A stretch of 64,000 bases of DNA, from NCBI GenBank assembly GCA_002269645.1, contig NIVC01000269.1, forward strand, positions 372,001 to 436,000. Reading direction: 5' to 3'. This stretch comes from Macrostomum lignano (taxonomy: Eukaryota). This document shows positions 4,587 through 51,648 of the stretch, in pieces. Under the pieces are notes generated by a model. The model was given only the letters and a program-made list of their open reading frames with translations. It had not been told where the DNA came from and did no database searches. How positions within the stretch are numbered: position 1 is the stretch's first letter; each line of letters opens with the position of its first letter. Made by a program: the position numbers and the translations under genes.

Positions 4587-4809
4587 TGTGGAGATTCGGG
4601 CTTCGGGGATGATCCTATTTTTTATTGTCCTCTCTCAGTGAACAATGGTGGAGGGACAAAGGTGTGTAGGCCTGCACCATTGCTTAACCAACCTCAAACC
4701 CATACACGCCTCACCCTCCTCCTCTCGGATTGCCCCACCCACCCCCACTTCCAAACCATAATTAATATTAAGAATCGCCGTCTATCCCCTCCCTAATCTG
4801 CCGCCACAG

Positions 4810-16038: not shown

Positions 16039-18258
16039 GAATCGCCCCTGAGCCAATTTTATAGGAATCGCCCCTGAGCCAATTTTATAGGAATCGCCCC
16101 TGAGCCAATTTTATAGGAATCGCCCCTGAGCCAATTTTATAGGAATCGCCCCTGAGCCAATTTTATAGGAATCGCCCCTGAGCCAATTTTATAAGAATCG
16201 CCCCTGAGCCAATTTTATAAGAATCGCCCCTGAGCCAATTTTATTAGAATCGCCCCTGAGCCAATTTTATAAGAATCGCCCCTGAGCCAATTTTATAGGA
16301 ATCGCCCCTGAGCCAATTTTATAGGAATCGCCCCTGAGCCAATTTTATAGGAATCGCCCCTGAGCCAATTTTATAAGAATCGCCCCTGAGCCAATTTTAT
16401 AAGAATCGCCCCTGAGCCAATTTTATAAGAATCGCCCCTGAGCCAATTTTATAAGAATCGCCCCTGAGCCAATTTTATAGGAATCGCCCCTGAGCCAATT
16501 TTATAGAAATCGCCCCTGAGCCAATTTTATAAGAATCGCCCCTGAGCTAATTTTATAAGAATCGCCCCTGAGCCAATTTTATAAGAACCGCCCCTGAGCC
16601 AATTTTATAAGAATCGCCCCTGAGCCAATTTTATAAGAATCGCCCCTGAGCCAATTTTATAAGAATCGCCCCTGAGCCAATTTTATAAGAATCGCCCCTG
16701 AGCCAATTTTATAAGAATCGCCCCTGAGCCAATTTTATAAGAATCGCCCCTGAGCCAATTTTATAGGAATCGCCCCTGAGCTAATTTTATAAGAATCGCC
16801 CCTGAGCTAATTTTATAAGAATCGCCCCTGAGCCAATTTTATAAGAATCGCCCCTGAGCCAATTTTATAAGAATCGCCCCTGAGCCAATTTTATAAGAAT
16901 CGCCCCTGAGCCAATTTTATAGGAATCGCCCCTGAGCCAATTTTATAAGAATCGCCCCTGAGCCAATTTTATAAGAATCGCCCCTGAGCTAATTTTATAA
17001 GAATCGCCCCTGAGCCAATTTTATAAGAATCGCCCCTGAGCCAATTTTATAAGAATCGCCCCTGAGCCAATTTTATAAGAATCGCCCCTGAGCTATTTTT
17101 ATAAGAATCGCCCCTGAGCCAATTTTATAAGAATCGCCCCTGAGCCAATTTTATAGGAATCGCCCTTGAGCCAGTTTTATAAGAATCGCCCCTGAGCCAA
17201 TTTTATAAGAACCGCCCCTGAGCCAATTTTATAAGAATCGCCCCTGAGCCAATTTTATAGGAATCGCCCCTGAGCCAATTTTATAAGAATCGCCCCTGAG
17301 CCAATTTTATAGGAATCGCCCCTGAGCCAATTTTATAGAAATCGCCCCTGAGCCAATTTTATAAGAATCGCCCCTGAGCTAATTTTATAAGAATCGCCCC
17401 TGAGCCAATTTTATAAGAATCGCCCCTGAGCCTATTTTATAAGAATCGCCCCTGAGCCAATTTTATAAGAATCGCCCCTGAGCCAATTTTATAAGAATCG
17501 CCCCTGAGCCAATTTTATAGGAATCGCCCCTGAGCCAATTTTATAAGAATCGCCCCTGAGCCAATTTTATAAGAATCGCCCTTGAGCCAATTTTATAAGA
17601 ATCGCCCCTGAGCCAATTTTATAGGAATCGCCCCTGAGCTAATTTTATAAGAATCGCCCCTGAGCCAATTTTATAAGAATCGCCCCTGAGCCAATTTTAT
17701 AAGAATCGCCCCTGAGCCAATTTTATAAGAATCGCCCCTGAGCCAATTTTATAGGAATCGCCCCTGAGCTAATTTTATAAGAATCGCCCCTGAGCTAATT
17801 TTATAAGAATCGCCCCTGAACCAATTTTATAAGAATCGCCCCTGAGCCAATTTTATAAGAATCGCCCTTGAGCCAATTTTATAAGAATCGCCCCTGAGCT
17901 AATTTTATAAGAATCGCCCCTGAGCCAATTTTATAAGAATCGCCCCTGAGCCAATTTTATAAGAATCGCCCCTGAGCCAATTTTATAAGAATCGCCCCTG
18001 AGCTAATTTTATAAGAATCGCCCCTGAGCCAATTTTATAAGAATCGCCCCTGAGCCAATTTTATAGGAATCGCCCTTGAGCCAATTTTATAAGAATCGCC
18101 CCTGAGCCAATTTTATAAGAATCGCCTCTGAGCCAATTTTATAAGAATCGCCCCTGAGCCAATTTTATAAGAATCGCCCCTGAGCCAATTTTATAAGAAT
18201 CGCCCCTGAGCCAATATTATAAGAATCGCAAGAATCGCCCCTGAACCAATTTTTATAA
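16039..18258. repeat. 26-bp tandem satellite (GAATCGCCCCTGAGCCAATTTTATAA/G), ~85 copies
   Basis: Starts 4 nt after the kinesin stop codon; homogeneous with point variants. Confidence 0.97.
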
Positions 18259-21588: not shown

Positions 21589-24500
21589 ATGGAAACGGCA
21601 GCTCCGGGTCTGTACAGCGCGGATTTAGCGGCCGCTGCGGCCGCGGCTCAGTTCGGTCAATTCCCGGATTCGAATAATCCACTGGATTATTTTCAGATCA
21701 CCACGGCGTCAAGTTTGCCGCAGGTGAGAAATTGAGAACGGCTGCTGATGATGGGTGTTTCGTGCCTATTCCTCCTCCCCCAATCTGAGAAGATCCGCCC
21801 CCAATCTGAAAAAAATCCGCCCCCCAATCTGAGAAGATCCGCCCCCAATCTGAGAAGATCCGCCCCAAATCTGAGAAGATCCGTCCCCAATCTAAGAAAA
21901 TCCGCCCCCAATCTGAGAAGATCCGCCCCCAATCTGAGAAGATCCGCCCCAAATCTGAGAAGATCCGCCCCAAATCTGAGAAGATCCGCCCCAAATCTGA
22001 GAAGATCCGCCCCCAATCTGAGAAGATCCGCCCCAAATCTGAGAAGATCCGCCCCAAATCTTAGAAGATCCACCCCAAATCTGAGAAGATCCACCCCCTA
22101 TCTGAGAAGATCCGCCCCCCTATCTGAGAAGATCCGCCCCTCCCCCTATCTGCGAAGATCCACCCCCTATCTGAGAAGATCCACCCCCCTATCTGAGAAG
22201 ATCCACCCCCCCCCCCTATCTGCGAAGATCCACCCCCTATCTGAGAAGATCCGCCCCCCCTATCTGAGAAGATCCACCCCCCTATCTGAGAAGATCCGCC
22301 CCTTATCTGAGAAGATCCGTCCCCCTATCTGAGAAGATCCACCCCCCTATCTGAGAAGATCCGCCCCCCTATCTGAGAAGATCCGCCCCCTATCTGAGAA
22401 GATCCACCCCCCCTATCTGAGAAGATCCGCCCCCCTATCTGAGAAGATCCGCCCCCCTATCTGAGAAGATCCGCCCCCCTATCTGAGAAGATTCGCCCCC
22501 CATCTCAGAAGATCCGCTCCCCAATCTGAGAAGATCCGCCCCAATCTGGAAAATCCGCCCCCAACCTGACAAATTCCGCCGAATAACCTGGGAAAATCTG
22601 TCATTTATCTTAAGGATTCCGACTAAATCGCTTAATACGCTGAATCCCCATCATCTCATCATCAGTAGGAATCAGAGTCTACCTGACCAATTCCCTTTAG
22701 CCTCAAGTTTAATATATCAGAGGCTTAACTTAGAAAATTCGAACCCTGACACGTTGAAATCGTAATATATCAGGTTGGAAAATTTCAGCATATCGACACT
22801 AGCGGCCATCTACAGTTTGCACGTGGCTCTCTTTTAGACCCCTTTCTAGAATATAATTACTTCTTCTTCGCGAAGATTGCACGTTGTGTGTGTGTCTTTC
22901 AATAATAGAGCTATCGAAATCATTTATTATAAACACCTGAGTGCAGGTGCGCAGCAAGGAGCAGGGAGGCGAGGGGGGGCGCCCCCCCCCCACAATAGGC
23001 TGGTTAAAAGTTAGGACGCCTCTTGTTGCTGGCGTCCCTTGGTGCTGGCGCCCCTTGGTGCTGGCGCCCCTTGTGCTGGCGCCTCTTGGTGCTGGCGCCC
23101 CTTGGTGCTCTGGCACCCCTTAGTGCTGGCGCCCCTTGGTGCTCTGGCGCCCCTTGGTGCTCTGGCGCCCCTTGGTACTCTGGCGCCCCTTGGTGCTCTG
23201 GCGCCCCTTGGTGCTCTGGCGCCCCTTGGTGCTCTGGCGCCCCTTGGTGCTGGCGCCCCTTGGTGCTCTGGCGCCCCTTAGTGCTAGCGCCCCTTGGTGC
23301 TCTGGCGCCCCTTGGTGCTCTGGCGCCCCTTGGTGTTCTGGCGCCCCTTGGTGCTCTGGCGCCCCTTGGTGTTCTGGCGCCCCTTGGTGCTGGTGCCCCT
23401 TGGTGCTGGCGCCCCTTGGTTCTGGCGCCCCTTGGTGCTCTGGCGTCCCTTGGTGCTCTGGCGCCCCTTGGTGCTCTGGTGCCCCTTGGTGCTCTGGCAC
23501 CCCTTGGTGTTCTGGCGCCCCTTGGTGTGCTGGCACCCCTTGGTGCTCTGGCGCCCCTTGGTGCTCTGGCGCCCCTTGGTGCTCTGACGCCTCAACGATT
23601 CTTCCCAATCGAAAAACCTGCCTATGGCCCAATGCAATCACACTTGCAGCCTTTGTTATGCATACTTAAATCGATGTAATTATTGTACACTCAACTATCA
23701 AAGCAACAAATTGCATCTTGGCTACACATTCATTAGAGATTGGTTATCTTAATCAATGTCAGTCAAAAATGAAGCTATAGCAGTTTCCGATGGCTTGTAG
23801 GGTTCAGAATGATTCAAGAATGTTGGGAAGGAGATTGCAATGAAAGATGATGGCGCATCGACGATGGTACCTGGCATATATAGGCAGATATGAAAATATG
23901 CAGCTTTGACAGTTGAAAAACAGACTGCAGTTGGGTTAATATCAGTATGTATCACTAGTAATTAAACAGGTACATCATTTTGGAAAGTCTGTGATAATAA
24001 AGTAGATACAGTCATAATAGAGTAGATACAGTGAGAATAGAGGAGAGACAATGAGAATAGAGAAGAGACAATGAGAATAGAGAAGATCAACAAGTGAGAA
24101 TAAAGAAGATGCAGTAAGAATAGAGTAGAGACAGTGAGAATAGAGAAGATCAACAGTAAGAATAGAGAAGAGACAGTAAGAATAGAGAAGAGACAGTGAG
24201 AATAGAGAAGAGACAATGAGAATAGAGAAGATCAACAAATGAGAATAGAGGAGACAGTGAGAATAGAGAAGATGCAGTAAGAATAGAGTAGAGACAGTGA
24301 GAATAGAGAAGATCAACAGTTAGAATAGAGAAGAGACAGTAAGAATAGAGAAGAGACATTGAGAATAGAGGAGACAGTGAGAATAGAGAAGATGCAGTAA
24401 GAATAGAGTAGAGACAGTGAGAATAGAGAAGAGACAATGAGAATAGAGAAGATCAACAAATGAGAATAGAGGAGACAGTGAGAATAGAGAAGATGCAGTA

Positions 24501-27500
24501 AGAATAGAGTAGAGACAGTGAGAATAGAGAAGATCAACAGTTAGAATAGAGAAGAGACAGTAAGAATAGAGAAGAGACATTGAGAATAGAGGAGACAGTG
24601 AGAATAGAGACGAGACAGTGAGAATAGAGAAGAGACAATGAGCATAGAGAAGATCAACAGTTAGAATAGAGAAGAGACAGTAAGAATAGAGAAGAGACAG
24701 TGAGAAGAGAGAAGAGACAATGAGAATAGAGAAGATGCAGTAAGAATACAGTAGAGACAGTGAGAATAGAGAAGAGACAATGAGAATAGAGAAGATCAAC
24801 AAGTGAGAATAGAGGAGACAGTGAGAATAGAGAAGATGCAATAAGAATAGAGTAGAGACAGTGAGAATAGAGTAGAGACAGTGAGAATAGAGAAGATCAA
24901 CAGTTAGAATAGAGAAGAGACAGTAAGAATAGAGAAGAGACATTGAGAATAGAGGAGACAGTGAGAATAGAGACGAGACAGTGAGAATAGAGAAGAGACA
25001 ATGAGAATAGAGAAGATGCAGTAAGAATAGAGAAGAGACAGTGAGAATAGTGAAGAGACAGTGAGAATAGTGAAGAGAAAACATAAGAAAATACTCAATG
25101 AGTCAGTCTAACTCCAAAACAAACTCTCAACCACACTAAACACAGATTTTCAACGGACAAACGGACTCAGAAGACGCCATGCCACCAATCTATTCTAGCC
25201 AATCTATGAATGGCAGCTCAAAGTCTTTGACGAATAACCATCAACAGCTCAGTGACCGTGCTCACTTGATGCAGCCGCCACCACCGCCACCGCCGCTGTA
25301 CCCCATGGAGCATCATGAGCATCAGCTGTTGCAACCAGACTTACTCGCATGCCATCAGCTGCACGAACAGCCTCATCAAAGCGGCTACTTCTGTCCAGAG
25401 CCGTCTACAGCTGCCGCGTCTATGGAGCAACCATTCTACTACCAGAATCAGCCTCAGAATGAGTTACATCCTGCTGGCTTTTATCAGGATGCACCATTCG
25501 AGTATCACGGTCTGTACGATTCCTCTGTTGTGTCGGGCTCTTGTCAGCAGCAGCAGCAGCATCATCAAGGATTAAATTATTTTGATCCAACATCCGTCGC
25601 CTTTTCTGTAAGTTTCTTTCCGGGAAGGAAGGAGTGAATATTTACTGTTTACAGTGACTGTTTACAGTTTAGAGCGACTGTTTACACTTCAGAGTGACTA
25701 TTTACTGTTTACAGTGACTGTTTACAGTTTAGAGCGACTGTTAACACTTCAGAGTGACTATTTACTGCTTAGAGCGACTGTTTACTGTTTAGAGTGACTA
25801 TTTACACTTTAGAGTGACTGTTTACTGTTTAGAGTGACTATTTACACTTTAGAGTGACTATTTACTGCTTAGAGCGACTGTTTACTGTTTAGAGTGACTA
25901 TTTACACTTTAGAGTGACTATTTACTGTTTAGAGTGACTATTTACACTTTAGAGTGACTATTTACTGATTAGAGCGACTATTTACACTTTAGAGTGACTA
26001 TTTACACTTTAGAGTGACTGTTTACTGTTCAGAGTGACTATTTACTGTTTCGAGTGACATTTGAAAGTTTTGAGTGACGTTGAGTACATATTGCACTTTT
26101 TCTTAATCCAGGATCCAGCTAGGTCGGATTTCTATGCTTATCAGCAGCACTACTATCAGCAGGTGAGATCTCCCCTCTTAAGTTGCATTCGTTCACCTTA
26201 TATGAACTTTTAGGTCTAAAAATCTCCCTCATTCCAAATCTCCCTCATTCCAAATCTCCTTCATTCCAAATCTCTCATTCCAAATCCCCCTCATTCCAAA
26301 TCTCCCTCATTCCAAATCTCCCTCATTCCAAATCTCCCTCATTCCAAATCTCCCTCATTCCAAATCTCCCTCATTCCAAATCTCTCATTCCAAATCTCTC
26401 ATTCCAAATCTCCTTCATTCCAAATCTCTCATTCCAAATCCCCCTCATTCCAAATCTCCCTCATTCCAAATCTCCCTCATTCCAAATCTCTCATTCCAAA
26501 TCTCCCTCATTCCAAGTCATCCTCATTCCAAATCTTCCTCATTCCAAATCTCCCTCATTCCAAATCATCCTCATTCCAAATCTCCCTCATTCCAAATCTC
26601 CCTCATTCCAAATCTCCCTCATTCCAAATCCCCCTCATTCCAAATCATCCTCATTCCAAATCTCCCTCATTCCAAATCCCCCTCATTCCAAATCCCCCTC
26701 ATTCCAAGTCATCCTCATTCCAAATCTCTCATTCCAAATCTTCCTCATTCCAAATCATCCTCATTCCAAATCTCCCTCATTCCAAATCATCCTCATTCCA
26801 AATCTCCCTCATTCCAAATCATCCTCATTCCAAATCTCCCTCATTCCAAATCTCCCTCATTCCAAATCTTCCTCATTCCAAATCTCCCTCATTCCAAATC
26901 TCCCTCATTCCAAATCTCTCATTCCAAATCATCCTCATTCCAAATCTCCTTCATTCCAAATCTCTCATTCCAAATCCCCCTCATTCCAAATCTCCCTCAT
27001 TCCAAATCTCCCTCATTCCAAATCTCTCATTCCAAATCTCTCATTCCAAATCTCCCTCATTCCAAATCTCCCTCATTCCAAATCTCCCTCATTCCAAATC
27101 TCCCTCATTCCAAATCTCCCTCATTCCAAATCTCTCATTCAAAATCTCCCTCATTCCAAATCTCCCTCATTCCAAATCTCTCATTCCAAATCTCCTTCAT
27201 TCCAAATCTCCCTCATTCCAAGTCATCCTCATTCCAAATCTTCCTCATTCCAAATCCCCCTCATTCCAAATCCCCCTCATTCCAAATCTCCCTCATTCCA
27301 AATCTCCCTCATTCCAAATCTCCCTCATTCCAAATCCCCCTCATTCCAAATCTCCCTCATTCCAAATCTCTCATTCTAAATCTCCCTCATTCCAAATCTC
27401 TCATTCCAAATCTCCCTCATTCCAAATCTCCCTCATTCCAAATCTCTCATTCCAAATCTCCCTCATTCCAAATCTCTCATTCCAAATCTCCTTCATTCCA

Positions 27501-30500
27501 AATCTCCCTCATTCCAAGTCATCCTCATTCCAAATCTTCCTCATTCCAAATCTTCCTCATTCCAAATCTTCCTCATTCCAAATCTCCTTCATTCCAAATC
27601 TCCCTCATTCCAAATCTCCCTCATTCCAAATCTCTCATTCCAAATCTCCCTCATTCCAAATCTCTCATTCCAAATCTCCTTCATTCCAAATCTCCCTCAT
27701 TCCAAGTCATCCTCATTCCAAATCTTCCTCATTCCAAATCTTCCTCATTCCAAATCTCTCATTCCAAATCTCCTTCATTCCAAATCTCCCTCATTCCAAG
27801 TCATCCTCATTCCAAATCTTCCTCATTCCAAATCTTCCTCATTCCAAATCATCCTCATTCCAAATCTCCCTCATTCCAAATCTCCCTCATTCCAAATCTC
27901 CCTCATTCCAAATCCCCCTCATTCCAAATCCCCCTCATTCCAAATCTCCCTCATTCCAAGTCATCCTCATTCCAAATCGCCTCACCCTACTTCCCCAGCA
28001 ACAGCACCATTTGCCGCCGGCACCTCCGCTGCCGCCACAGCCACCGCAGCTGGTGGACTCGCAAGTCGCTCAGCCTCCTCCGCCATCTCTACCGCCGCAG
28101 CCGCAGCCGCAGCCTCAACCGCGGCAGTCAGCGAAGCGACCTTCGAACCCCGCCACTGACGCGGCTCCTCCGATCGCCAAACCGACAGCCAGCCGGCCAA
28201 AATCGGCCAAGCCATCGCAGTCGAACAAACAGCAGCAAGCTGTCCAAGCGTCCAGCCTCGATCCCTCGACATCGTCCACGAAGTCTTCGAAAAACTCGAC
28301 GCCCCAGGCGGTTCCGCTGCCCAAGCCGAAGCCGTTGCCTAGCAACGGTTACGAGCGTCGACGCCGGCTACTTGCCGATATTAGTCGAACGACAACTGGT
28401 GCGGCTACGGAAACTTTTGCCGGCTGCAACAAGGCGCAGCAGCAGAAGAGAGCCGGCAAGAAGAGGCCGAGCCAAGCTGGCGACTCCACAAGCGACAACT
28501 TCAGCGACAGCAACGACGCTGACCGACTTGGTAGCGACATGGACGACGACATGGCCGACGAGGATGCTGAGGACGATGAAGAGGAGGAGGACGATGCGAA
28601 TTTGACTCCGGAGGAGAAGCTGATGCGAGAAAAGGCGCGTCGGCACGCCAACAATGCTAGAGAGAGGTGAGGCGGCTCAATCAGTTGGAAAGATTCCACT
28701 CAATCAGATGGAAAGATTCCCTTCAATCAGTTGGGAAGTTTCCCCTCAATCAGTTGGAAAGATTCCCTTCAATCAACTAGAAAGATTCTCCTCAATCAGA
28801 TGGAAAGATTCCCCTGAATCAGATTAAAAGATTCCCCTGGATCAGTTGGAAAGATACCACTCAAGCAGATCGAAGCAAGATTCCCTTTAATCAGTTAAGA
28901 AGATTTCCCCCGCAAAAGGAACGAGTCTTTAACAATAGGAAAATACCCCCTAATCAAACGGAGATTATCGCCGCAGATTTGTTACAGATTTTGTGCCATA
29001 AAAATCGATAAATATAAAACGGCTCGGCCCAACAGGCTGCGAGTGAAAGACATCAATGACGCATTCAGAGAGCTTGGCAAGGTGGTTGACTTGCACTCGG
29101 AATTGGATAGCGGAAGCCAGCAGCCGCCGTTGACAAAACTTGCTGTCCTGCAGCAGGCGGTCAGCATCATTGCTTCTCTGGAGCAGCAGGTTCTAGGTTG
29201 TACTTTTAAACTATTCGAAAGAACAAGATGAACTCAATTGTTGCTGTGCTGTTTTGTGCCGGCTTTTGATTTTGTTCTGGTTTATTGATGTGTTGTTTCA
29301 TGCAACGATTTCAAAACATCTGATAGCCAGCCTCGCAAATGAAGCATTACAATAGGTTGCTAATCTATAGCCAACCTCACAGATAAAGCATTACAATAGG
29401 TTGCTAATCTATAGCCAACCTCACAGATAAAGGATTAGAATGGATTGCTAATCTATAGCCAACCTCACAGATAAAACATTAGAATAAATTGCTAATCTAT
29501 AGCAAACGTCAGATAAAGAATTTAAAAGGATTGCTAATCTGCTCAGACACATGTAAGGCTACATATATCGAGAGATCGTATCCAGCCTGAATGATTAATT
29601 ACCAGTTTTGGAAACATTTATTCCTTGCGTTTTCATGGTGACAGACGTTTGATGTAAATCAATCAGCTGCATTACAGCCAAATAAATCAGAAATCGTTTA
29701 ACAAAATATCGCGTTCTACAGGATTCGAGTTCGGGACATCAACGGCGCCTTCAAAGAGCTGGGCCGCATGACCATGATGCATTTGAAGTGCGAGAAGCCC
29801 CAGACTAAGCTCTGTGTATTGCAACAGGCTGTTACAGTCATCACAGCGCTGGAACAGCAAGTCAGAGGTTTGCCTGCGCGCGATTCTTTATGACTTAATT
29901 GATTTTATCAGATAATTTCTCGAGGTGTACAACATTTTGTTTTGCCGCGGTATTCGGTTTTTTATCTTCTTATCTGCAGCGTACATTCAGTGTACCGAGA
30001 CCGATTCTAGGGTCTAAAAATCGCCAGTGTACATTCTGTGTAGCCATAAGTTATGGCCCATAACCCTAGTTTCTAAAAATAGCTAGAGTGTACATTCAAT
30101 GCAGCCTTAACCCTAGTTTCTAAAAATAGCCAGAGTGTACATGCGGTGAAGCATCAATCTTAGTGTCCAAAAATAGATCAGAAAATTTATTTAATTAAGC
30201 GTCAATCCTAGTGTCTGATATAGGCGTAATGTACATTCTGTTTAGCATCAAAGTTACCAAGTTATCACGACAACTATCAACCCATCTGTTCCACACAGAG
30301 CGCAATCTGAACCCCAAAGCAGCCTGTCTGAAGCGCAGGGAGGAGGAAAAATCCAGCGATCACGAGTTTCCAGGGCCATCGGGAGAGAGTAAGGTAAGAC
30401 AGCCGGGTCATTAAACGCAATTCAATGGAATGTATTGGGGACAATATTTTCTACTATGTGCCCGATATCATACTAACATCAATTATGCTTTGTTCATTTC

Positions 30501-31797
30501 AGAATCCATTTCGAATTTTTCTGATTTGATTGCAAAAATTTGATTTATTTCAACTCGTAATTTTTCTGAAGTTATTAGTTTTGAAAAACTGGATATTGTG
30601 TTTCTTTATTAGTAGATTTTGAATGCGGTGAAAGGTTTTTGTTTTGGAAATTTTATCATTTGTATTAGTATGATATAATATTAATAATTGTAAATAGTAA
30701 ACGGTCAAATACTTACTATAAAAGCCCGAACTTTTGATTTATCTATTGAATCCATCCGAAAGTAGTTTAAATAACCCCACCCCTCTCAAAAAGTACATTG
30801 AGCGCCCCAACCCCTTTCTCCGAAAAGTACATTGGATGCCCCAACCCTTTTCTCCTAAAAATACAATAAACACCCCAATCCGTCTCTCTAAAAGTACATT
30901 GACTACACAACCCTTTTATCCAAAATATTAAACGCATCAGACCCTTTCTTTCAAAAGTACATTGAGTACCCAACTCCATTTCTTCTAAAAGTACATAGAG
31001 TACCTGAAACCTTTTCTCAAAAACTACATTTAGCATTCCGACCCCCTTTCTCTTAAAAGTACATTAGTCAAGCAACAGCTAATATCACTAGTGCAACACT
31101 CTAGATGTTCTTCATTTGCCCTTAATTGATTACCCAACCACTGTATTCCCAAAGTACCGTGAGTACCCTAATCCCTTTTTACCAATTTCAAATTGTTATT
31201 TATAATCCAGCTTGATTTAAATTATGAAAATTTCAGTTTTGATTTATAAAACCGGTGATTCGTGATTAGAATTTCTATTAAAAGCCACGAGCTAGTTATA
31301 CTGAGATTTATTTTATTAATTATTCTTCAATTGCAAAACACCTTCCAGACTACTCACTAACTGGCTGTACTCAGCCTCAAGCTCAGCAACAGCTGGATAG
31401 TCAACCAATTTCCGCATTCTACAATCCAACTGAACAGCCGCCGTCACTTCGCCAGCAGCCGCATTTCCAGGAAAGCCACAACAGCGCGGTGGCTGCTCAG
31501 CAGTACCTAATGTACTTTACTACTAACAGTAGCAATCAGCATTGCCAGCAACCAGATGAACAGCAGCCGCAAACAATGCCAACTAGAAATAGAATCGACG
31601 CCACAATATCCGAAGCTATTGGCGAGCCATTCGATAATGCCCCAACCGATCAAGTGGCAGCAGTAGCAGCAGAAGCAGAAGATTCCACAGCAGCAGCTCT
31701 TGGCTTCAGTGCCGATGAGTTTTTGATGCCGCATCCGGAGCCGTTGAGACCGGATGTTGAGAATGCTGGCGGCATTGCTGGCCGCCATGATTCCTAG
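21589..31797 (+). CDS. TCF4: Class I bHLH E-protein (daughterless/TCF3/TCF4/TCF12-like) transcription factor
   Basis: Phase-compatible exons: 21589-21723 (ATG in GCCATGG context), 25146-25607, 26112-26162, 27999-28666, then either 29036-29196 or 29722-29867, then 30299-30388 and 31349-31797 (TAG). Diagnostic sequence: [70 protein letters not shown]. The symbol marks the family; one-to-one orthology to a vertebrate paralog is not claimed. Confidence 0.9.
21775..22560. repeat. Intronic ~21-bp minisatellite (CCCCAATCTGAGAAGATCCGC)
   Basis: Tandem copies after the donor at 21724. Confidence 0.92.
23030..23585. repeat. GC-rich 18-bp minisatellite (GGCGCCCCTTGGTGCTCT)
   Basis: Tandem copies containing the GGCGCC palindrome. 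Confidence 0.92.
23990..25080. repeat. Purine-rich ~20-bp minisatellite (GAGAATAGAGAAGAGACAGT)
   Basis: Tandem variant copies. Confidence 0.92.
25640..26060. repeat. ~20-bp minisatellite (TTTACTGTTTAGAGTGACTA)
   Basis: Tandem copies filling the intron 25608-26111. Confidence 0.9.
26220..27975. repeat. 16-bp minisatellite with 14-bp variants (CCCTCATTCCAAATCT)
   Basis: Fills almost the whole intron 26163-27998. Confidence 0.95.
28678..28900. repeat. Degenerate ~23-bp minisatellite (AATCAGTTGGAAAGATTCCCCTC)
   Basis: Tandem copies after the donor at 28667. Confidence 0.75.
29036..29196 (+). CDS. Alternative HLH exon A of the E-protein gene
   Basis: CAACAG acceptor and GT donor, phase 2 to phase 1. 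Encodes [54 protein letters not shown] with no stop. Confidence 0.7.
29325..29535. repeat. 43-bp tandem repeat between the two HLH exons
   Basis: TTGCTAATCTATAGCCAACCTCACAGATAAA recurs at 29358, 29401, 29444 and about 29488. Confidence 0.8.
29722..29867 (+). CDS. Alternative HLH exon B (canonical) of the E-protein gene
   Basis: TCTACAG acceptor and GT donor, phase 2 to phase 1. Encodes [49 protein letters not shown]. Confidence 0.88.
30760..31070. repeat. Degenerate ~40-bp intronic repeat (AAAAGTACATTG...ACCCCTTTCT)
   Basis: The AAAAGTACAT core recurs about 7 times. Confidence 0.6.
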
Positions 31798-35375: not shown

Positions 35376-36454
35376 TTAGGATTCACAGCTGAACACCTGC
35401 AGTCTCCTGTTGCCATGGTCAGATACAATCAGCTGCTCGCGCGGACCTCCCGTCACCACCGCCAGACCCCATGGACCCCTGAATCTTCCGTCTCTGCTGC
35501 CGCTCTCGCCCGGAGTCCCCAGAGTCCACAGCAGCGACCCGTCGTCTGCAGCCACCGCTCGAACTGAGGGACCAACGAATTCACTCACGAACAGGCGGCC
35601 TCTGCTGTCGACGGCCACATCAATTGGACCAGCAAACTGTTGGAGGCCGGAACGCTGAGTCGGGAAGGAGGCGACCAGCTGCTGGGTGTCGATGCGCACT
35701 CTGTGCACCTGATTGGACTGACAGTCTGTCACCAGAATGCAGTTGTCGTGAGTCGCTAAGTTACGCAGATCAGCACGAGGAAGCTGAGACAGCGTGATGA
35801 CCGTCTCCATCTGCCAAGTCGCTTTGCTGAATGCAGCAATTTTGTTTCCACTGGACACAAACACGGAGGCTGCGTTGCCGCCGATTCCCTTGATGTCACC
35901 GAAGTCCTCGATGTGTGGGCGGACTCGACGCACCGCGCGACCGCTCAGGTCCGTCACTGTCACTGCGTCATCCTGAGCAATGAACAGCAGCTGACGGTCG
36001 CAGTGAAGGCCAAAAAAGGTCATCCTTCCAGTCGATGTCGCAGTGGCACCGCAGCTTCTGTGAGCCGTACACAGACAGCACCAGTACATGAAGGTGGTAC
36101 ATGTACTTATTACTAAAGCAATAGAATGATGCAAGGATCATTCATTCAAGGAACAACACCGCCCGAGCAGTCACCAACGAATCCGCTGGTGTCGCTGCAC
36201 ACAGCCAGCCATGAGACAAGGCCATCCGGCTTCACCTCGTGACTGAAGACCATCGGATCGAACAGCAGTCTGTGAGCAGCGTCTCTCGACCAGTCGCCCT
36301 CTTCACTGCGTCCCGCACAAATGCCGACAAGCCGCTCGAGCTGGCCCAGAAGCCGCAGCTGCAGCTCCTCATTGTCGCTCTGGTCTCTGAGCAGGCGCTC
36401 TGACCTCTCAAAGTCGGCCTCAAAGTCTCCAAGCGATTCGTGCATGGACTGGAC
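35376..36454 (-). pseudogene. NHL-repeat gene paralog 1; 5'-truncated, with in-frame stop, deletions and frameshift
   Basis: Highly similar to the gene at 58493-60193 (MHESLGD.EADFERSERLLRDQSDNEELQ; FAGPIDVAVDSRG; NRRLQVFS). Homology ends abruptly at about 36454. It has a stop after VVP, lacks the VTATSEEIDAA segment, and carries an extra base in the A6 run at 36012-36017. Confidence 0.8.
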
Positions 36455-37037: not shown

Positions 37038-40000
37038 CTGTGAGCTCTCTGGTCACTGAGAGCAGCAGGCATGAATTCTGTGAGCTCTCTGGTCACTGAG
37101 AGCAGCAGGCATGAATTCTGTGAGCTCTCTGGTCACTGAGAGCAGCAGGCATGAATTCTGTGAGCTCTCTGGTCACTGAGAGCAGCAGGCATGAATTCTG
37201 TGAGCTCTCTGGTCACTGAGAGCAGCAGGCATGAATTCTGTGAGCTCTCTGGTCACTGAGAGCAGCAGGCATGAATTCTGTGAGCTCTCTGGTCACTGAG
37301 AGCAGCAGGCATGAATTCTGTGAGCTCTCTGGTCACTGAGAGCAGCAGGCATGAATTCTGTGAGCTCTCTGGTCACTGAGAGCAGCAGGCATGAATTCTG
37401 TGAGCTCTCTGGTCACTGAGAGCAGCAGGCATGAATTCTGTGAGCTCTCTGGTCACTGAGAGCAGCAGGCATGAATTCTGTGAGCTCTCTGGTCACTGAG
37501 AGCAGCAGGCATGAATTCTGTGAGCTCTCTGGTCACTGAGAGCAGCAGGCATGAATTCTGTGAGCTCTCTGGTCACTGAGAGCAGCAGGCATGAATTCTG
37601 TGAGCTCTCTGGTCACTGAGAGCAGCAGGCATGAATTCTGTGAGCTCTCTGGTCACTGAGAGCAGCAGGCATGAATTCTGTGAGCTCTCTGGTCACTGAG
37701 AGCAGCAGGCATGAATTCTGTGAGCTCTCTGGTCACTGAGAGCAGCAGGCATGAATTCTGTGAGCTCTCTGGTCACTGAGAGCAGCAGGCATGAATTCTG
37801 TGAGCTCTCTGGTCACTGAGAGCAGCAGGCATGAATTCTGTGAGCTCTCTGGTCACTGAGAGCAGCAGGCATGAATTCTGTGAGCTCTCTGGTCACTGAG
37901 AGCAGCAGGCATGAATTCTGTGAGCTCTCTGGTCACTGAGAGCAGCAGGCATGAATTCTGTGAGCTCTCTGGTCACTGAGAGCAGCAGGCATGAATTCTG
38001 TGAGCTCTCTGGTCACTGAGAGCAGCAGGCATGAATTCTGTGAGCTCTCTGGTCACTGAGAGCAGCAGGCATGAATTCTGTGAGCTCTCTGGTCACTGAG
38101 AGCAGCAGGCATGAATTCTGTGAGCTCTCTGGTCACTGAGAGCAGCAGGCATGAATTCTGTGAGCTCTCTGGTCACTGAGAGCAGCAGGCATGAATTCTG
38201 TGAGCTCTCTGGTCACTGAGAGCAGCAGGCATGAATTCTGTGAGCTCTCTGGTCACTGAGAGCAGCAGGCATGAATTCTGTGAGCTCTCTGGTCACTGAG
38301 AGCAGCAGGCATGAATTCTGTGAGCTCTCTGGTCACTGAGAGCAGCAGGCATGAATTCTGTGAGCTCTCTGGTCACTGAGAGCAGCAGGCATGAATTCTG
38401 TGAGCTCTCTGGTCACTGAGAGCAGCAGGCATGAATTCTGTGAGCTCTCTGGTCACTGAGAGCAGCAGGCATGAATTCTGTGAGCTCTCTGGTCACTGAG
38501 AGCAGCAGGCATGAATTCTGTGAGCTCTCTGGTCACTGAGAGCAGCAGGCATGAATTCTGTGAGCTCTCTGGTCACTGAGAGCAGCAGGCATGAATTCTG
38601 TGAGCTTCTGGTCACTGAGAGCAGCAGGCATGAATTCTGTGAGCTTCTGGTCACTGAGAGCAGCAGGCATGAATTCTGTGAGCTCTCTGGTCACTGAGAG
38701 CAGCAGGCATGAATTCTGTGAGCTTCTGGTCACTGAGAGCAGCAGGCATGAATTCTGTGAGCTTCTGGTCACTGAGAGCAGCAGGCATGAATTCTGTGAG
38801 CTCTCTGGTCACTGAGAGCAGCAGGCATGAATTCTGTGAGCTCTCTGGTCACTGAGAGCAGCAGGCATGAATTCTGTGAGCTCTCTGGTCACTGAGAGCA
38901 GCAGGCATGAATTCTGTGAGCTCTCTGGTCACTGAGAGCAGCAGGCATGAATTCTGTGAGCTCTCTGGTCACTGAGAGCAGCAGGCATGAATTCTGTGAG
39001 CTCTCTGGTCACTGAGAGCAGCAGGCATGAATTCTGTGAGCTCTCTGGTCACTGAGAGCAGCAGGCATGAATTCTGTGAGCTCTCTGGTCACTGAGAGCA
39101 GCAGGCATGAATTCTGTGAGCTCTCTGGTCACTGAGAGCAGCAGGCATGAATTCTGTGAGCTCTCTGGTCACTGAGAGCAGCAGGCATGAATTCTGTGAG
39201 CTCTCTGGTCACTGAGAGCAGCAGGCATGAATTCTGTGAGCTCTCTGGTCACTGAGAGCAGCAGGCATGAATTCTGTGAGCTCTCTGGTCACTGAGAGCA
39301 GCAGGCATGAATTCTGTGAGCTCTCTGGTCACTGAGAGCAGCAGGCATGAATTCTGTGAGCTCTCTGGTCACTGAGAGCAGCAGGCATGAATTCTGTGAG
39401 CTCTCTGGTCACTGAGAGCAGCAGGCATGAATTCTGTGAGCTCTCTGGTCACTGAGAGCAGCAGGCATGAATTCTGTGAGCTCTCTGGTCACTGAGAGCA
39501 GCAGGCATGAATTCTGTGAGCTCTCTGGTCACTGAGAGCAGCAGGCATGAATTCTGTGAGCTCTCTGGTCACTGAGAGCAGCAGGCATGAATTCTGTGAG
39601 CTCTCTGGTCACTGAGAGCAGCAGGCATGAATTCTGTGAGCTCTCTGGTCACTGAGAGCAGCAGGCATGAATTCTGTGAGCTCTCTGGTCACTGAGAGCA
39701 GCAGGCATGAATTCTGTGAGCTCTCTGGTCACTGAGAGCAGCAGGCATGAATTCTGTGAGCTCTCTGGTCACTGAGAGCAGCAGGCATGAATTCTGTGAG
39801 CTCTCTGGTCACTGAGAGCAGCAGGCATGAATTCTGTGAGCTCTCTGGTCACTGAGAGCAGCAGGCATGAATTCTGTGAGCTCTCTGGTCACTGAGAGCA
39901 GCAGGCATGAATTCTGTGAGCTCTCTGGTCACTGAGAGCAGCAGGCATGAATTCTGTGAGCTCTCTGGTCACTGAGAGCAGCAGGCATGAATTCTGTGAG

Positions 40001-43000
40001 CTCTCTGGTCACTGAGAGCAGCAGGCATGAATTCTGTGAGCTCTCTGGTCACTGAGAGCAGCAGGCATGAATTCTGTGAGCTCTCTGGTCACTGAGAGCA
40101 GCAGGCATGAATTCTGTGAGCTCTCTGGTCACTGAGAGCAGCAGGCATGAATTCTGTGAGCTCTCTGGTCACTGAGAGCAGCAGGCATGAATTCTGTGAG
40201 CTCTCTGGTCACTGAGAGCAGCAGGCATGAATTCTGTGAGCTCTCTGGTCACTGAGAGCAGCAGGCATGAATTCTGTGAGCTCTCTGGTCACTGAGAGCA
40301 GCAGGCATGAATTCTGTGAGCTCTCTGGTCACTGAGAGCAGCAGGCATGAATTCTGTGAGCTCTCTGGTCACTGAGAGCAGCAGGCATGAATTCTGTGAG
40401 CTCTCTGGTCACTGAGAGCAGCAGGCATGAATTCTGTGAGCTCTCTGGTCACTGAGAGCAGCAGGCATGAATTCTGTGAGCTCTCTGGTCACTGAGAGCA
40501 GCAGGCATGAATTCTGTGAGCTCTCTGGTCACTGAGAGCAGCAGGCATGAATTCTGTGAGCTCTCTGGTCACTGAGAGCAGCAGGCATGAATTCTGTGAG
40601 CTCTCTGGTCACTGAGAGCAGCAGGCATGAATTCTGTGAGCTCTCTGGTCACTGAGAGCAGCAGGCATGAATTCTGTGAGCTCTCTGGTCACTGAGAGCA
40701 GCAGGCATGAATTCTGTGAGCTCTCTGGTCACTGAGAGCAGCAGGCATGAATTCTGTGAGCTCTCTGGTCACTGAGAGCAGCAGGCATGAATTCTGTGAG
40801 CTCTCTGGTCACTGAGAGCAGCAGGCATGAATTCTGTGAGCTCTCTGGTCACTGAGAGCAGCAGGCATGAATTCTGTGAGCTCTCTGGTCACTGAGAGCA
40901 GCAGGCATGAATTCTGTGAGCTCTCTGGTCACTGAGAGCAGCAGGCATGAATTCTGTGAGCTCTCTGGTCACTGAGAGCAGCAGGCATGAATTCTGTGAG
41001 CTCTCTGGTCACTGAGAGCAGCAGGCATGAATTCTGTGAGCTCTCTGGTCACTGAGAGCAGCAGGCATGAATTCTGTGAGCTCTCTGGTCACTGAGAGCA
41101 GCAGGCATGAATTCTGTGAGCTCTCTGGTCACTGAGAGCAGCAGGCATGAATTCTGTGAGCTCTCTGGTCACTGAGAGCAGCAGGCATGAATTCTGTGAG
41201 CTCTCTGGTCACTGAGAGCAGCAGGCATGAATTCTGTGAGCTCTCTGGTCACTGAGAGCAGCAGGCATGAATTCTGTGAGCTCTCTGGTCACTGAGAGCA
41301 GCAGGCATGAATTCTGTGAGCTCTCTGGTCACTGAGAGCAGCAGGCATGAATTCTGTGAGCTCTCTGGTCACTGAGAGCAGCAGGCATGAATTCTGTGAG
41401 CTCTCTGGTCACTGAGAGCAGCAGGCATGAATTCTGTGAGCTCTCTGGTCACTGAGAGCAGCAGGCATGAATTCTGTGAGCTCTCTGGTCACTGAGAGCA
41501 GCAGGCATGAATTCTGTGAGCTCTCTGGTCACTGAGAGCAGCAGGCATGAATTCTGTGAGCTCTCTGGTCACTGAGAGCAGCAGGCATGAATTCTGTGAG
41601 CTCTCTGGTCACTGAGAGCAGCAGGCATGAATTCTGTGAGCTCTCTGGTCACTGAGAGCAGCAGGCATGAATTCTGTGAGCTCTCTGGTCACTGAGAGCA
41701 GCAGGCATGAATTCTGTGAGCTCTCTGGTCACTGAGAGCAGCAGGCATGAATTCTGTGAGCTCTCTGGTCACTGAGAGCAGCAGGCATGAATTCTGTGAG
41801 CTCTCTGGTCACTGAGAGCAGCAGGCATGAATTCTGTGAGCTCTCTGGTCACTGAGAGCAGCAGGCATGAATTCTGTGAGCTCTCTGGTCACTGAGAGCA
41901 GCAGGCATGAATTCTGTGAGCTCTCTGGTCACTGAGAGCAGCAGGCATGAATTCTGTGAGCTCTCTGGTCACTGAGAGCAGCAGGCATGAATTCTGTGAG
42001 CTCTCTGGTCACTGAGAGCAGCAGGCATGAATTCTGTGAGCTCTCTGGTCACTGAGAGCAGCAGGCATGAATTCTGTGAGCTCTCTGGTCACTGAGAGCA
42101 GCAGGCATGAATTCTGTGAGCTCTCTGGTCACTGAGAGCAGCAGGCATGAATTCTGTGAGCTCTCTGGTCACTGAGAGCAGCAGGCATGAATTCTGTGAG
42201 CTCTCTGGTCACTGAGAGCAGCAGGCATGAATTCTGTGAGCTCTCTGGTCACTGAGAGCAGCAGGCATGAATTCTGTGAGCTCTCTGGTCACTGAGAGCA
42301 GCAGGCATGAATTCTGTGAGCTCTCTGGTCACTGAGAGCAGCAGGCATGAATTCTGTGAGCTCTCTGGTCACTGAGAGCAGCAGGCATGAATTCTGTGAG
42401 CTCTCTGGTCACTGAGAGCAGCAGGCATGAATTCTGTGAGCTCTCTGGTCACTGAGAGCAGCAGGCATGAATTCTGTGAGCTCTCTGGTCACTGAGAGCA
42501 GCAGGCATGAATTCTGTGAGCTCTCTGGTCACTGAGAGCAGCAGGCATGAATTCTGTGAGCTCTCTGGTCACTGAGAGCAGCAGGCATGAATTCTGTGAG
42601 CTCTCTGGTCACTGAGAGCAGCAGGCATGAATTCTGTGAGCTCTCTGGTCACTGAGAGCAGCAGGCATGAATTCTGTGAGCTCTCTGGTCACTGAGAGCA
42701 GCAGGCATGAATTCTGTGAGCTCTCTGGTCACTGAGAGCAGCAGGCATGAATTCTGTGAGCTCTCTGGTCACTGAGAGCAGCAGGCATGAATTCTGTGAG
42801 CTCTCTGGTCACTGAGAGCAGCAGGCATGAATTCTGTGAGCTCTCTGGTCACTGAGAGCAGCAGGCATGAATTCTGTGAGCTCTCTGGTCACTGAGAGCA
42901 GCAGGCATGAATTCTGTGAGCTCTCTGGTCACTGAGAGCAGCAGGCATGAATTCTGTGAGCTCTCTGGTCACTGAGAGCAGCAGGCATGAATTCTGTGAG

Positions 43001-50957: not shown

Positions 50958-51648
50958 TGAAAAATAAACGAAACATCACACCTCCACCACACAACAGAAG
51001 CCAGGAAACCAGGATAAACAGCGAATGAGAAGAGCCAGCAAACTTACGAAGCAGAAATCTGTTCCAAAAACCGAAGTCAAAGTCTGTTTAGTTCAGAGTT
51101 AAGCAGTCACTTTGTTACTCATGGACTCCAGATCCGACTCAGTCCATCAGCCACGGCATTCTCGAGAGCACATCTCGCAGTCGGAGGCAGACGGGCAGAA
51201 CGGTTGAAAGCCAGTCAAATTTCCCAGCAATAAACACCTGTGCCCATGCATATAAACACAAAGCAATGGACCATTGAGGAAAATGCAAAAAAGAAGCGAG
51301 TGCTGAGTGAGGAGAATTTAAGCAAACTGCATGCCACTTTTGATGAAATTCAATTCACAAGTCAAGTCCCAATTTCTTGTGCTGAAACTTCTAGAAAAAG
51401 AAACATAATGAGAGAAGCGTTGAGGGCCAACGTAAAATTAATTTAATTACTTAATACAATGTCTAATGTGCATCTATTCAATGCATATTAATTCAGAATG
51501 TACTGGAAATGATAAACAATCATCAGACAAAGAAGGTCATCACTTGTTAAAAATTCCATAATAAAAAAGCGACCGATACCCGGCCTTCAACAAACCAATC
51601 ACTCCAAAAACACAGTTTGATTAATTATTATTCGGCCTGTGAATAAAA

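What the first reader, a model, noticed from the sequence alone, without database searches (positions are those of the whole stretch)
29036..29867. Tandem duplicated, apparently mutually exclusive HLH exons in an invertebrate E-protein gene (E12/E47-like switch)
Seen: two exons with identical phases (2 to 1) lie between the basic-region exon (ending ...ANNARE) and the [10 protein letters not shown] exon. Both are open and both encode the whole helix-loop-helix. Exon B is canonical, with G at the usual RDINEAF glutamate. Exon A is divergent, with a loop 5 residues longer ([16 protein letters not shown]) and altered helix residues. Including both (161+146 nt) or neither shifts the frame. Known: vertebrate TCF3 makes E12 and E47 from mutually exclusive bHLH exons that include the basic region. 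Inference: here the duplicated unit starts after the basic region, so this would be an independent origin. The two isoforms would share most DNA-contacting residues but differ in dimerisation surface and partner choice.
Basis: partly seen in the sequence, partly recalled or inferred. Interest (0 to 1): 0.82.

Follow-up and report, generated by a model that had tools for sequence, protein, structure and literature searches.

The report
Ancient alternative dimerisation exons in E-protein gene
A flatworm (Macrostomum) E-protein transcription-factor gene carries two interchangeable exons for its helix-loop-helix dimerisation domain, and the same exon pair is conserved across flatworms and annelids (with a similar pair in crustaceans), so it is an old, apparently undescribed counterpart of the vertebrate E12/E47 switch.

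Summary
Exon A (29036-29196, 161 nt) and exon B (29722-29867, 146 nt) both have AG/GT splice sites and the same phases. Each encodes a complete helix-loop-helix between the basic-region exon (ends 28666) and the [10 protein letters not shown] exon (starts 30299). Including both or neither shifts the frame.

The window is from Macrostomum lignano or a very close relative.

The pair is not a local curiosity. A second, anciently diverged M. lignano E-protein gene has the same A/B layout. Both exons are under purifying selection, while the introns no longer align. The same A-then-B pair sits at the same intron position in a schistosome, in two annelids (Capitella and Helobdella each have a third copy), and in cestode and monogenean gene models. 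Five crustaceans have an analogous pair. Lottia, Limulus, a wasp and Trichoplax have one exon.

In a neighbour-joining tree, window exon A falls in a spiralian "A-type" clade (QPLTKL signature).

The vertebrate E12/E47 unit differs because it also includes the basic region, and vertebrate copies group separately.

No Macrostomum RNA data were reachable, so mutually exclusive use is inferred, not shown. I found no paper describing this cluster.

Verdict: a real, conserved mutually exclusive exon cluster and a new variant of a known kind.

The parts
21649..21714 (+). Upstream coding segment of the same gene ([16 protein letters not shown]). It shows the gene extends at least 6 kb upstream of the bHLH exons.
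   Evidence: tblastn of the M. lignano paralogue P0172 (residues 86-107) against the window, 64% identity, E 2e-4. Exon borders were not determined.
27999..28666 (+). Constitutive exon encoding a proline/serine-rich region, an acidic stretch and the basic (DNA-contacting) region. It ends ...[12 protein letters not shown] plus 2 nt of the next Arg codon.
   Evidence: Open frame with donor GAG|gtgagg at 28666. The acceptor at 27999 (cttccccag|CAA) is predicted. UniProt model P0121 also starts there.
28676..28896 (.). 23-nt minisatellite filling most of the intron between the basic exon and exon A.
   Evidence: Tandem Repeats Finder, 9.5 copies.
29036..29196 (+). Alternative HLH exon A (161 nt, phase 2 to 1). 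It is the spiralian A-type, here with a 5-residue longer loop and a terminal Leu instead of Arg.
   Evidence: AG/GT sites and open frame. Pfam HLH 47.6 bits. Falls in the spiralian A-type clade, bootstrap 67. pN 0.144 against pS 0.76 versus the paralogue's exon A.
29318..29540 (.). 44-nt minisatellite inside the 525-nt intron between exons A and B.
   Evidence: Tandem Repeats Finder, 5.1 copies.
29722..29867 (+). Alternative HLH exon B (146 nt, phase 2 to 1). It is the canonical KPQTKL type, with Gly in RDINGAF.
   Evidence: AG/GT sites and open frame. Pfam HLH 42.9 bits. 83% nt and 94% aa identity to the paralogue's exon B, pN 0.05 against pS 0.60.
30299..30396 (+). Constitutive exon (E)[29 protein letters not shown].., the E-protein-specific extension of helix 2. 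It has two tandem candidate donors, after 30388 (A|gtaagg) and after 30396 (AAG|gtaaga).
   Evidence: Acceptor cacacag|AG at 30299. 84% nt identity to the paralogue. The donor choice is unresolved.
31349..31797 (+). Probable last coding exon (predicted). It is in frame with the 30388 donor, and the stop is TAG at 31795-31797.
   Evidence: Open frame and acceptor ccttccag|AC. There is no homology support, so this is a prediction only.

Best explanation
The window holds a class I bHLH (E-protein) gene of Macrostomum lignano or a very close relative. Its helix-loop-helix is encoded by a cluster of two mutually exclusive exons.

How it most likely works: the splicing machinery joins the constitutive basic-region exon to either exon A or exon B, and then to the constitutive [10 protein letters not shown] exon. 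Each HLH exon is 3n+2 nt long, so only single inclusion gives a full protein. Double inclusion creates an early stop that is a candidate for nonsense-mediated decay. Double skipping destroys the HLH.

The two proteins share the basic region, up to and including the RxRV[KR]DIN start of helix 1. They differ in the rest of helix 1, the loop and helix 2, which form the dimer interface. They are therefore expected to differ in partner preference or dimer stability rather than in E-box contact.

The pair is the local copy of an old spiralian A-type/B-type exon pair. It predates the split of flatworms, annelids and molluscs, and both M. lignano E-protein paralogues have kept it.

Shown: exon anatomy, frame logic, conservation, purifying selection and orthology of exon types.
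Inferred: actual alternative use in this animal, regulation, and functional difference.
For: Species: the top hit is M. lignano A0A1I8FSE8 (P0121), 97-98% identical, including stretches translated from intron.

The M. lignano paralogue locus L001 has the same layout: basic exon, A-type exon, B-type exon, [10 protein letters not shown] exon. All have AG/GT sites and both HLH exons are 146 nt.

Between the two genes only exons align and the introns do not. Synonymous sites are saturated, yet pN/pS is about 0.19 for A and 0.08 for B.

The same cluster at the same intron position:
- Lamellibrachia has A+B.
- Capitella has A, a third type, and B.
- Helobdella has A, B and a divergent third copy.
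- Heterobilharzia has A+B.
- Gene models of Schistocephalus and Cichlidogyrus contain both A-type and B-type sequence.

Analogous pairs occur in Homarus (genomic) and in models of Hyalella, Amphibalanus, Darwinula and Cyprideis.

The neighbour-joining tree gives a spiralian A-type clade that includes window exon A (bootstrap 67) and a pancrustacean type-2 clade (bootstrap 97).

The A-type is spliced to both flanking exons in an intron-free Logan contig (L009). It is also the form in annotated mollusc proteins.

The two alternative exons have weaker polypyrimidine tracts (0.45 and 0.50) and weaker donors than the flanking constitutive exons (0.85 and 0.70).

Both isoforms are good HLH domains.
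Against: - There is no transcript evidence from Macrostomum. Three protein-database searches returned only genome-derived M. lignano models: P0172, which uses exon B only; P0275, which joins the basic exon to exon A of the paralogue; and several others that are mis-spliced, frameshifted or concatenate both exons.
- Window exon A is the longest branch of its clade. It has a 5-residue loop insertion, Leu in place of the otherwise invariant final Arg, and about 3 times the amino-acid divergence of exon B. This would also fit relaxed constraint.
- No conserved intronic docking/selector structure or silencer was found that would explain the regulation.
- Exon A of Heterobilharzia is 1 nt short in a T-run in the assembly.
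Confidence: 0.75

Rival explanations
1. In this particular paralogue exon A is a relic. The ancestral A/B cluster is real, but here only exon B is spliced in and exon A is drifting toward a pseudo-exon.
For: Exon A is the most divergent member of the A-type clade: loop +5 residues, KLM changed to KLA, final Arg changed to Leu. Its pN is about 3 times that of exon B. It has a weak acceptor tract and a weak donor. No transcript containing it was found.
Against: The reading frame, both splice sites and the phase are intact. The hydrophobic core positions of both helices are kept. Nonsynonymous change is only about a fifth of synonymous change, while the surrounding introns have diverged beyond alignment. 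The near-identical second copy or allele behind P0121 also has an intact exon A with a single conservative R/K change. Exon B has equally weak splice signals.
Confidence: 0.17
2. The pair is a recent duplication specific to Macrostomum, unrelated to anything in other phyla.
For: Only the tandem arrangement itself supports this.
Against: A and B are only 67% identical at the nucleotide level, with saturated synonymous sites. The A-type and B-type each have closer relatives in annelids, molluscs and parasitic flatworms than they have in each other.
Confidence: 0.02
3. The exons are not alternatives within one mRNA. One of them belongs to a separate transcript, for example one started by a spliced leader or an internal promoter, giving a product that lacks the basic region.
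For: Spliced-leader trans-splicing exists in M. lignano (my own knowledge, not tested here). No RNA data were available to exclude this.
Against: Neither exon starts with a usable in-frame ATG upstream of helix 1. Phases and lengths are conserved at 3n+2 in every species examined, as expected for internal cassette alternatives. Intron-free contigs and annotated proteins join the A-type directly to the basic region and to [10 protein letters not shown].
Confidence: 0.04

Closest known systems
Vertebrate TCF3/E2A exons 18a/18b (E12 and E47), mutually exclusive splicing
   Same: It is the same gene family (class I bHLH). Tandem homologous exons encode the HLH. The 3' boundary is identical (…QQVR | [10 protein letters not shown], phase 1). 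Exactly one copy is used, giving isoforms with different dimerisation and DNA-binding behaviour (PMC6795145, PMC6120717).
   Different: The vertebrate unit also contains the acidic stretch and the whole basic region, so the two isoforms differ in DNA-contacting residues. Here the unit begins one residue after ANNARE, at an intron that is also present in Trichoplax, Limulus and a wasp. Vertebrate copies group with each other and with TCF4, not with the spiralian A or B types. The vertebrate regulators (hnRNP H1/F exonic silencers and a PTBP1-bound intronic region) have no recognisable counterpart here.
Spiralian E-protein genes (Capitella, Lamellibrachia, Helobdella, Heterobilharzia, Schistocephalus, Cichlidogyrus; molluscs with the A-type only)
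   Same: The order is the same (A-type, then B-type) between the same two constitutive exons. The phases are the same and the length is 146 nt. The A-type signature …QP[LM]TKLM… is shared.
   Different: Window exon A has 15 extra nucleotides in the loop and several substitutions at otherwise conserved positions. Capitella, and possibly Helobdella, have a third exon. Lottia has only the A-type within the locus examined.
Crustacean daughterless/E-protein genes (Homarus, Hyalella, Amphibalanus, Darwinula, Cyprideis)
   Same: There are two tandem 146-nt HLH exons after the same intron, and they are concatenated by gene predictors in the same way.
   Different: The exon types differ. The first is a chelicerate-like EAF…KAQTKL type. 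The second is the EAL…KPQTKLGILNMAV type, which is the only one found in the insects examined. Orthology with the spiralian pair is not supported by the tree, so this may be a separate duplication.
Drosophila daughterless and C. elegans HLH-2
   Same: They are orthologous E-protein genes with one bHLH and the [10 protein letters not shown] extension.
   Different: They have a single HLH exon type. This rests on my own knowledge for fly and worm. It was tested here only for a wasp (Microctonus), which has one HLH exon. The lack of the cluster in the classical invertebrate models may explain why it has been overlooked.

Membership tests
Class I bHLH / E-protein (E12/E47, TCF4, TCF12, daughterless, HLH-2) | bHLH domain recognised by the Pfam HLH model | tested here: met
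   PF00010 scores 47.6 bits (isoform A) and 42.9 bits (isoform B) against a cutoff of 20.7.
Class I bHLH / E-protein (E12/E47, TCF4, TCF12, daughterless, HLH-2) | E-protein-specific basic region (RRxANNARER) and helix-2 extension [18 protein letters not shown] | tested here: met
   Read directly from the exons. The region aligns end to end with solved E2-alpha and TCF4 chains, best E 4e-31.
Class I bHLH / E-protein (E12/E47, TCF4, TCF12, daughterless, HLH-2) | Closest relatives in large databases are E proteins | tested here: met
   All top hits are TCF4, TCF12, E2-alpha or daughterless, plus M. lignano bHLH proteins.
Class I bHLH / E-protein (E12/E47, TCF4, TCF12, daughterless, HLH-2) | N-terminal activation domains AD1 (LDFS motif) and AD2 (LDEAIHVLRNH) | tested here: inconclusive
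   A regex scan of the + strand frames found no AD1 or AD2 motif. One upstream exon (21649-21714, …NPLDYFQ…) is shared with the M. lignano paralogue and could be an AD1-like element. The 5' part of the gene was not reconstructed.
Mutually exclusive exon (MXE) cluster | Adjacent exons that are homologous to each other | tested here: met
   A and B are 525 nt apart, 67% identical in nucleotides and about 52% in amino acids.
Mutually exclusive exon (MXE) cluster | Same splice phases, canonical splice sites on every copy, and a frame kept only by single inclusion | tested here: met
   The exons are 161 and 146 nt (both 3n+2), each with AG acceptor and GT donor. A+B and skipping both give premature stops.
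Mutually exclusive exon (MXE) cluster | Each copy separately conserved in paralogues and orthologues | tested here: met
   The paralogue L001 and the flatworm and annelid loci keep both types. pN is well below pS, and the introns cannot be aligned.
Mutually exclusive exon (MXE) cluster | Mature transcripts contain exactly one of the copies | not testable with these tools
   No Macrostomum RNA-derived sequence was found in three database searches. There is only indirect support from another lophotrochozoan, an intron-free contig with the A-type alone.
Vertebrate TCF3 E12/E47 exon pair (same evolutionary event) | Duplicated unit spans the acidic stretch, basic region and HLH | tested here: not met
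   Vertebrate models that hold both copies repeat …EEKDLRDRERRMANNARER…. In the window the basic region is single and constitutive.
Vertebrate TCF3 E12/E47 exon pair (same evolutionary event) | Exon copies orthologous to E12 or E47 | tested here: not met
   In the neighbour-joining tree E12, E47 and TCF4 group together, away from spiralian A and B. Support is weak because the alignment has only about 50 columns.
Spiralian A-type/B-type HLH exon pair (defined in this report) | The A-type exon (loop …QP[LM]TKLM…) comes before the B-type exon (…KPQTKL…) between the ANNARE exon and the [10 protein letters not shown] exon | tested here: met
   The window order is A then B. Exon A reads …QQPPLTKLA…, a modified form of the signature. 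It lies in the A-type clade with bootstrap 67.

The most novel reading that the evidence does not exclude
E-protein genes have repeatedly, or very anciently, turned their dimerisation domain into a mutually exclusive exon cluster. The evidence suggests one origin in vertebrate TCF3, one at or before the base of Spiralia (A-type/B-type, with third copies in annelids), and one in pancrustaceans. The spiralian A-type would be a distinct dimerisation class kept for more than 500 million years. The whole phenomenon would have gone unnoticed because fly and nematode lack it, and because gene predictors either pick one exon or fuse both. Some published bHLH censuses may have counted alternative exons as extra E12/E47 genes.
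Probability: 0.55. Interest if true: 0.75.

Novelty: new variant of a known kind. Interest (0 to 1): 0.66.

Why it matters
E proteins are the obligate partners of the tissue-specific class II bHLH factors (proneural, myogenic and others) and the targets of Id/Emc inhibitors. An isoform switch confined to the dimer interface would give an animal two versions of the common partner with the same DNA reading head. That is a simple way to re-wire which bHLH pairs form in which cells.

Three consequences follow from finding this switch conserved across flatworms and annelids, mirrored in crustaceans, and distinct from the vertebrate E12/E47 unit:
- It points to recurrent selection for the same solution in one gene family.
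- It offers tractable systems to test what an HLH-only isoform switch does. Macrostomum supports RNAi and transgenesis, and Capitella and Parhyale-like crustaceans are also workable.
- It flags systematic annotation errors (fused or single-exon models) and possible miscounts in bHLH gene censuses.

Tried and rejected
- **Macrostomum transcripts.** I looked for transcript-derived proteins that would show A or B junctions. The three allowed homology searches returned only genome-derived M. lignano models. P0121 and P0142 concatenate both exons using intronic or shifted borders, so they are not RNA evidence.
- **RNA structures that could enforce exclusivity (docking/selector type).** The inverted repeats in 28600-30400 are short (12-17 nt, 81-92% complementary). 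The best one is not conserved in the paralogue. No intronic sequence at all is conserved between the two M. lignano genes.
- **Steric exclusion.** This is ruled out by the 525-nt intron between A and B.
- **Literature.** Nine full-text searches and six papers read found no description of HLH exon alternatives in invertebrate E proteins.
  - The butterfly daughterless mutually exclusive exons (PMC9218548) are newly found exons of unstated coding content, not shown to be HLH exons.
  - bHLH censuses (PMC1828162, PMC5882748, PMC5381572) do not mention splicing.
- **Popillia model P0144.** It repeats the basic region and an identical HLH. I set it aside as a likely assembly or annotation artefact, not the same phenomenon.
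- **Hypsibius model P0335.** It holds two complete, distant bHLH domains and is probably two fused genes.
- **Other HLH copies.** I checked whether the window or the paralogue has a third HLH exon. Neither does.
- **Gryllus look-up.** It failed because the protein is not on record.
Full report
**1. What is in the sequence**

- A long exon ends at 28666 with ...[18 protein letters not shown] plus AG, followed by gtgagg.
- Exon A (29036-29196, 161 nt) and exon B (29722-29867, 146 nt) each follow an AG and precede a GT. Each starts with the third base of an Arg codon and ends with the first base of a Glu codon.
- That Glu codon is completed by the next exon (30299..., [18 protein letters not shown]).
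- Either exon alone gives an open bHLH protein. Both together give a stop inside exon B, 186 nt upstream of the last junction. Neither gives a frameshifted tail.
- With either exon the protein matches Pfam HLH well above threshold.
- Against solved E47, E12 and TCF4 structures, the five extra residues of exon A fall in the loop. A single-sequence AlphaFold model (mean pLDDT 73.5) agrees: helix 1 is at residues 29-49, a 10-residue loop follows, and helix 2 is at 60-83.
- The two alternative exons have poorer polypyrimidine tracts (0.45 and 0.50) and weaker donors than the flanking constitutive exons (0.85 and 0.70).

**2. Whose gene it is**

- A profile of the two predicted isoforms finds as its best hit a Macrostomum lignano UniProt entry (P0121, A0A1I8FSE8). 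It is 97-98% identical to the window, even across stretches that are translated intron. The window is therefore M. lignano or a very close relative. P0121 is an allele or a recent duplicate of this locus.
- P0121 is an ab initio model that strings exon A and exon B together using intronic extensions. It shows that a second copy has both exons intact, but it is not RNA evidence.
- The gene extends upstream at least to 21649-21714, where a short motif is shared with the other M. lignano E-protein.
- A kinesin gene occupies about 4.7-16 kb upstream.

**3. The paralogue test**

M. lignano has a second, strongly diverged E-protein gene (P0172, with models P0142 and P0275).

- Its genomic locus (L001) has the same four-exon layout: a basic exon, an A-type exon ([49 protein letters not shown]), a B-type exon, and the [10 protein letters not shown] exon. 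All have AG/GT sites and both HLH exons are 146 nt.
- Between the two genes blastn aligns only the exons, and no intronic sequence is recognisable.
- Nei-Gojobori counts give pS 0.76 (saturated) against pN 0.144 for exon A. For exon B they give pS 0.60 against pN 0.05.
- Both exons have therefore been kept by selection in both genes since an old duplication. Exon A of the window gene evolves about three times faster than exon B.

**4. Other phyla**

Mis-annotated proteins holding two HLH copies gave the lead. Genomic loci were then fetched and scanned by tblastn, and the exon borders were read.

| Species (group) | HLH exons found between the ANNARE exon and the [10 protein letters not shown] exon |
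|---|---|
| Lamellibrachia (annelid) | A-type, then B-type |
| Capitella (annelid) | A-type, a third type (152 nt), then B-type |
| Helobdella (leech) | A-type, B-type, and a divergent third copy without a proper acceptor |
| Heterobilharzia (schistosome) | A-type, then B-type; the A exon is 1 nt short in a T-run (sequencing error or recent lesion) |
| Schistocephalus (cestode), Cichlidogyrus (monogenean) | gene models contain both A-type and B-type |
| Homarus (genomic); Hyalella, Amphibalanus, Darwinula, Cyprideis (models) | two tandem HLH exons of other types: first EAF…KAQTKL, then the daughterless-like EAL…KPQTKLGILNMAV |
| Lottia (mollusc) | A-type only |
| Limulus | first arthropod type only |
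| Microctonus (wasp) | second arthropod type only |
| Trichoplax | one HLH, itself split by an extra intron |

- All of these species have the intron right after ANNARE. That intron is therefore ancestral, and the duplicated unit is simply a pre-existing exon.
- Every intact copy is 146 nt, or 152 or 161 nt with loop insertions. All are 3n+2.

**5. Exon phylogeny**

I built a neighbour-joining tree of 35 HLH exon peptides with 200 bootstraps.

- Window exon A groups with the A-type exons of flatworms and annelids and with the mollusc sequences (bootstrap 67). It is the longest and earliest branch of that clade.
- The two Macrostomum B exons group together (bootstrap 82).
- The pancrustacean second type forms a tight clade (bootstrap 97).
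- Vertebrate E47, E12 and TCF4 group together.
- With only about 50 columns, deep nodes are not resolved. The QP[LM]TKLM signature independently marks the A-type.

The A/B duplication therefore predates the divergence of flatworms, annelids and molluscs. Whether the crustacean pair is the same event cannot be decided. The single type-1 exon in Limulus and the clustering of Homarus exon 1 with chelicerate sequences favour a separate, later duplication.

**6. Relation to E12/E47**

- Vertebrate models that contain both TCF3 copies show that the vertebrate unit repeats the acidic stretch and the basic region as well as the HLH. In the window the basic region is single.
- The 3' boundary (QQVR|ERNLNPK) is shared.
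- Together with the tree, this makes a separate origin the better reading.
- The vertebrate regulatory logic involves hnRNP H1/F silencers in one exon and a PTBP1-bound conserved intronic region (PMC6795145). It has no detectable counterpart here, and I found no conserved intronic element or convincing inverted repeat.

**7. Is the A-type used?**

- Direct evidence for Macrostomum is missing.
- Indirect evidence:
  - An intron-free Logan contig (L009, run SRR28369049) joins a basic region, an annelid-like A-type HLH and [10 protein letters not shown] in one open frame.
  - Annotated mollusc E proteins all use the A-type.
  - The M. lignano model P0275 joins ANNARE directly to the paralogue's A exon.
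  - The NCBI model P0172 uses B.

**8. Mechanism proposed**

- Shown: two competing cassette exons, frame-enforced exclusivity, a shared DNA-reading head, and different dimer-interface sequences.
- Inferred: regulated choice between them yields E-protein isoforms with different partner preference or dimer stability, and double-inclusion transcripts are removed by nonsense-mediated decay.
- One concrete difference concerns the helix-1 cysteine (GRMC…) that forms the E47 homodimer disulphide in mammals (my own knowledge). It is present in the B-type exons of the annelids Capitella and Lamellibrachia and of the parasitic flatworms. It is absent from the B-type of Helobdella (GKMV), from all spiralian A-type exons, and from both Macrostomum exon types (alignment).

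**9. Known or new?**

- Nine full-text searches and six papers read turned up only the vertebrate TCF3 case. A butterfly daughterless case involves unannotated exons of unstated content.
- A lophotrochozoan bHLH census lists two E12/E47 genes for Helobdella and Lingula, and one for Capitella and the molluscs, without mentioning alternative exons (PMC5381572). Some of those counts may reflect this cluster, but I could not check that.
- I therefore rate the finding as a new variant of a known kind. The caveat is that subscription-only literature and RefSeq isoform records were not searchable.

**10. Limits**

- No RNA data were reachable.
- No deuterostome invertebrate, cnidarian, brachiopod, bivalve or cephalopod genome could be reached.
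- The tree rests on about 50 residues.
- The 5' end and the last exon of the window gene are predictions, and two tandem donors at 30388 and 30396 give different C-termini.

Noticed in passing
window 37038-48099: An 11-kb satellite of a 40-nt unit (CTGTGAGCTCTCTGGTCACTGAGAGCAGCAGGCATGAATT), about 277 copies at 99% identity. It explains the flat composition profile between 38 and 48 kb.
   Followed up: partly
window 16039-18229, 21773-22580, 23029-23591, 23991-25078, 25632-26078, 26220-27978, 28676-28896, 29318-29540, 30062-30176: Almost every intron or intergenic stretch of the E-protein gene holds its own minisatellite, with periods of 16-47 nt and up to 112 copies. Each of the three introns around the alternative exons has one. 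None is shared with the paralogue's introns.
   Followed up: partly
window 4762-5220 (+), with coiled-coil-like open frames up to about 16 kb: There is a kinesin motor-domain exon upstream (Pfam Kinesin, 143.6 bits). The Trichoplax E-protein locus also has a kinesin gene next to it (L006 8982-12810, minus strand), probably of a different kinesin family. This is likely coincidence.
   Followed up: no
window 35379-36137 (-); similar open frames near 51643-52318 and 58597-59182: An NHL-repeat open frame lies on the minus strand (Pfam NHL, 30.9 bits). Closely similar translated segments occur at two further places, which suggests three copies of one gene or repeat family.
   Followed up: no
window 30381-30399: Two candidate donors lie 8 nt apart at the end of the [10 protein letters not shown] exon (A|gtaagg after 30388, AAG|gtaaga after 30396). 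With the acceptor at 31349, the first gives a 150-residue C-terminal extension. The second gives a stop after three codons.
   Followed up: partly
L004 11139-11291 (Capitella); L007 14800-14952 (Helobdella): Both annelids have a third HLH exon with a 2-residue longer loop. The Capitella copy has proper splice sites and a 3n+2 length. The Helobdella copy is very divergent and lacks an AG acceptor in the right phase, so it may be a pseudo-exon.
   Followed up: partly
L008 10776-10921 (Heterobilharzia americana): The A-type exon is 145 nt because a T-run is one base short (GCTTTAAAG where GCTTTTAAAG is expected). The rest of the exon is perfectly conserved, so this is an assembly error or a very recent frameshift.
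   Followed up: partly
Proteins P0121, P0142 (M. lignano); P0146-P0149, P0152, P0330, P0331, P0339 (other invertebrates); P0122-P0143 (vertebrate TCF3): Public gene models often fuse the alternative HLH exons into one protein with two HLH domains. A search for E-protein models with two HLH matches is an efficient way to find such clusters.
   Followed up: yes
PMC5381572, Table 1: A lophotrochozoan bHLH census counts two E12/E47 genes in Helobdella and Lingula and treats the leech excess as gene duplication. The extra members might be alternative HLH exons of one gene.
   Followed up: no
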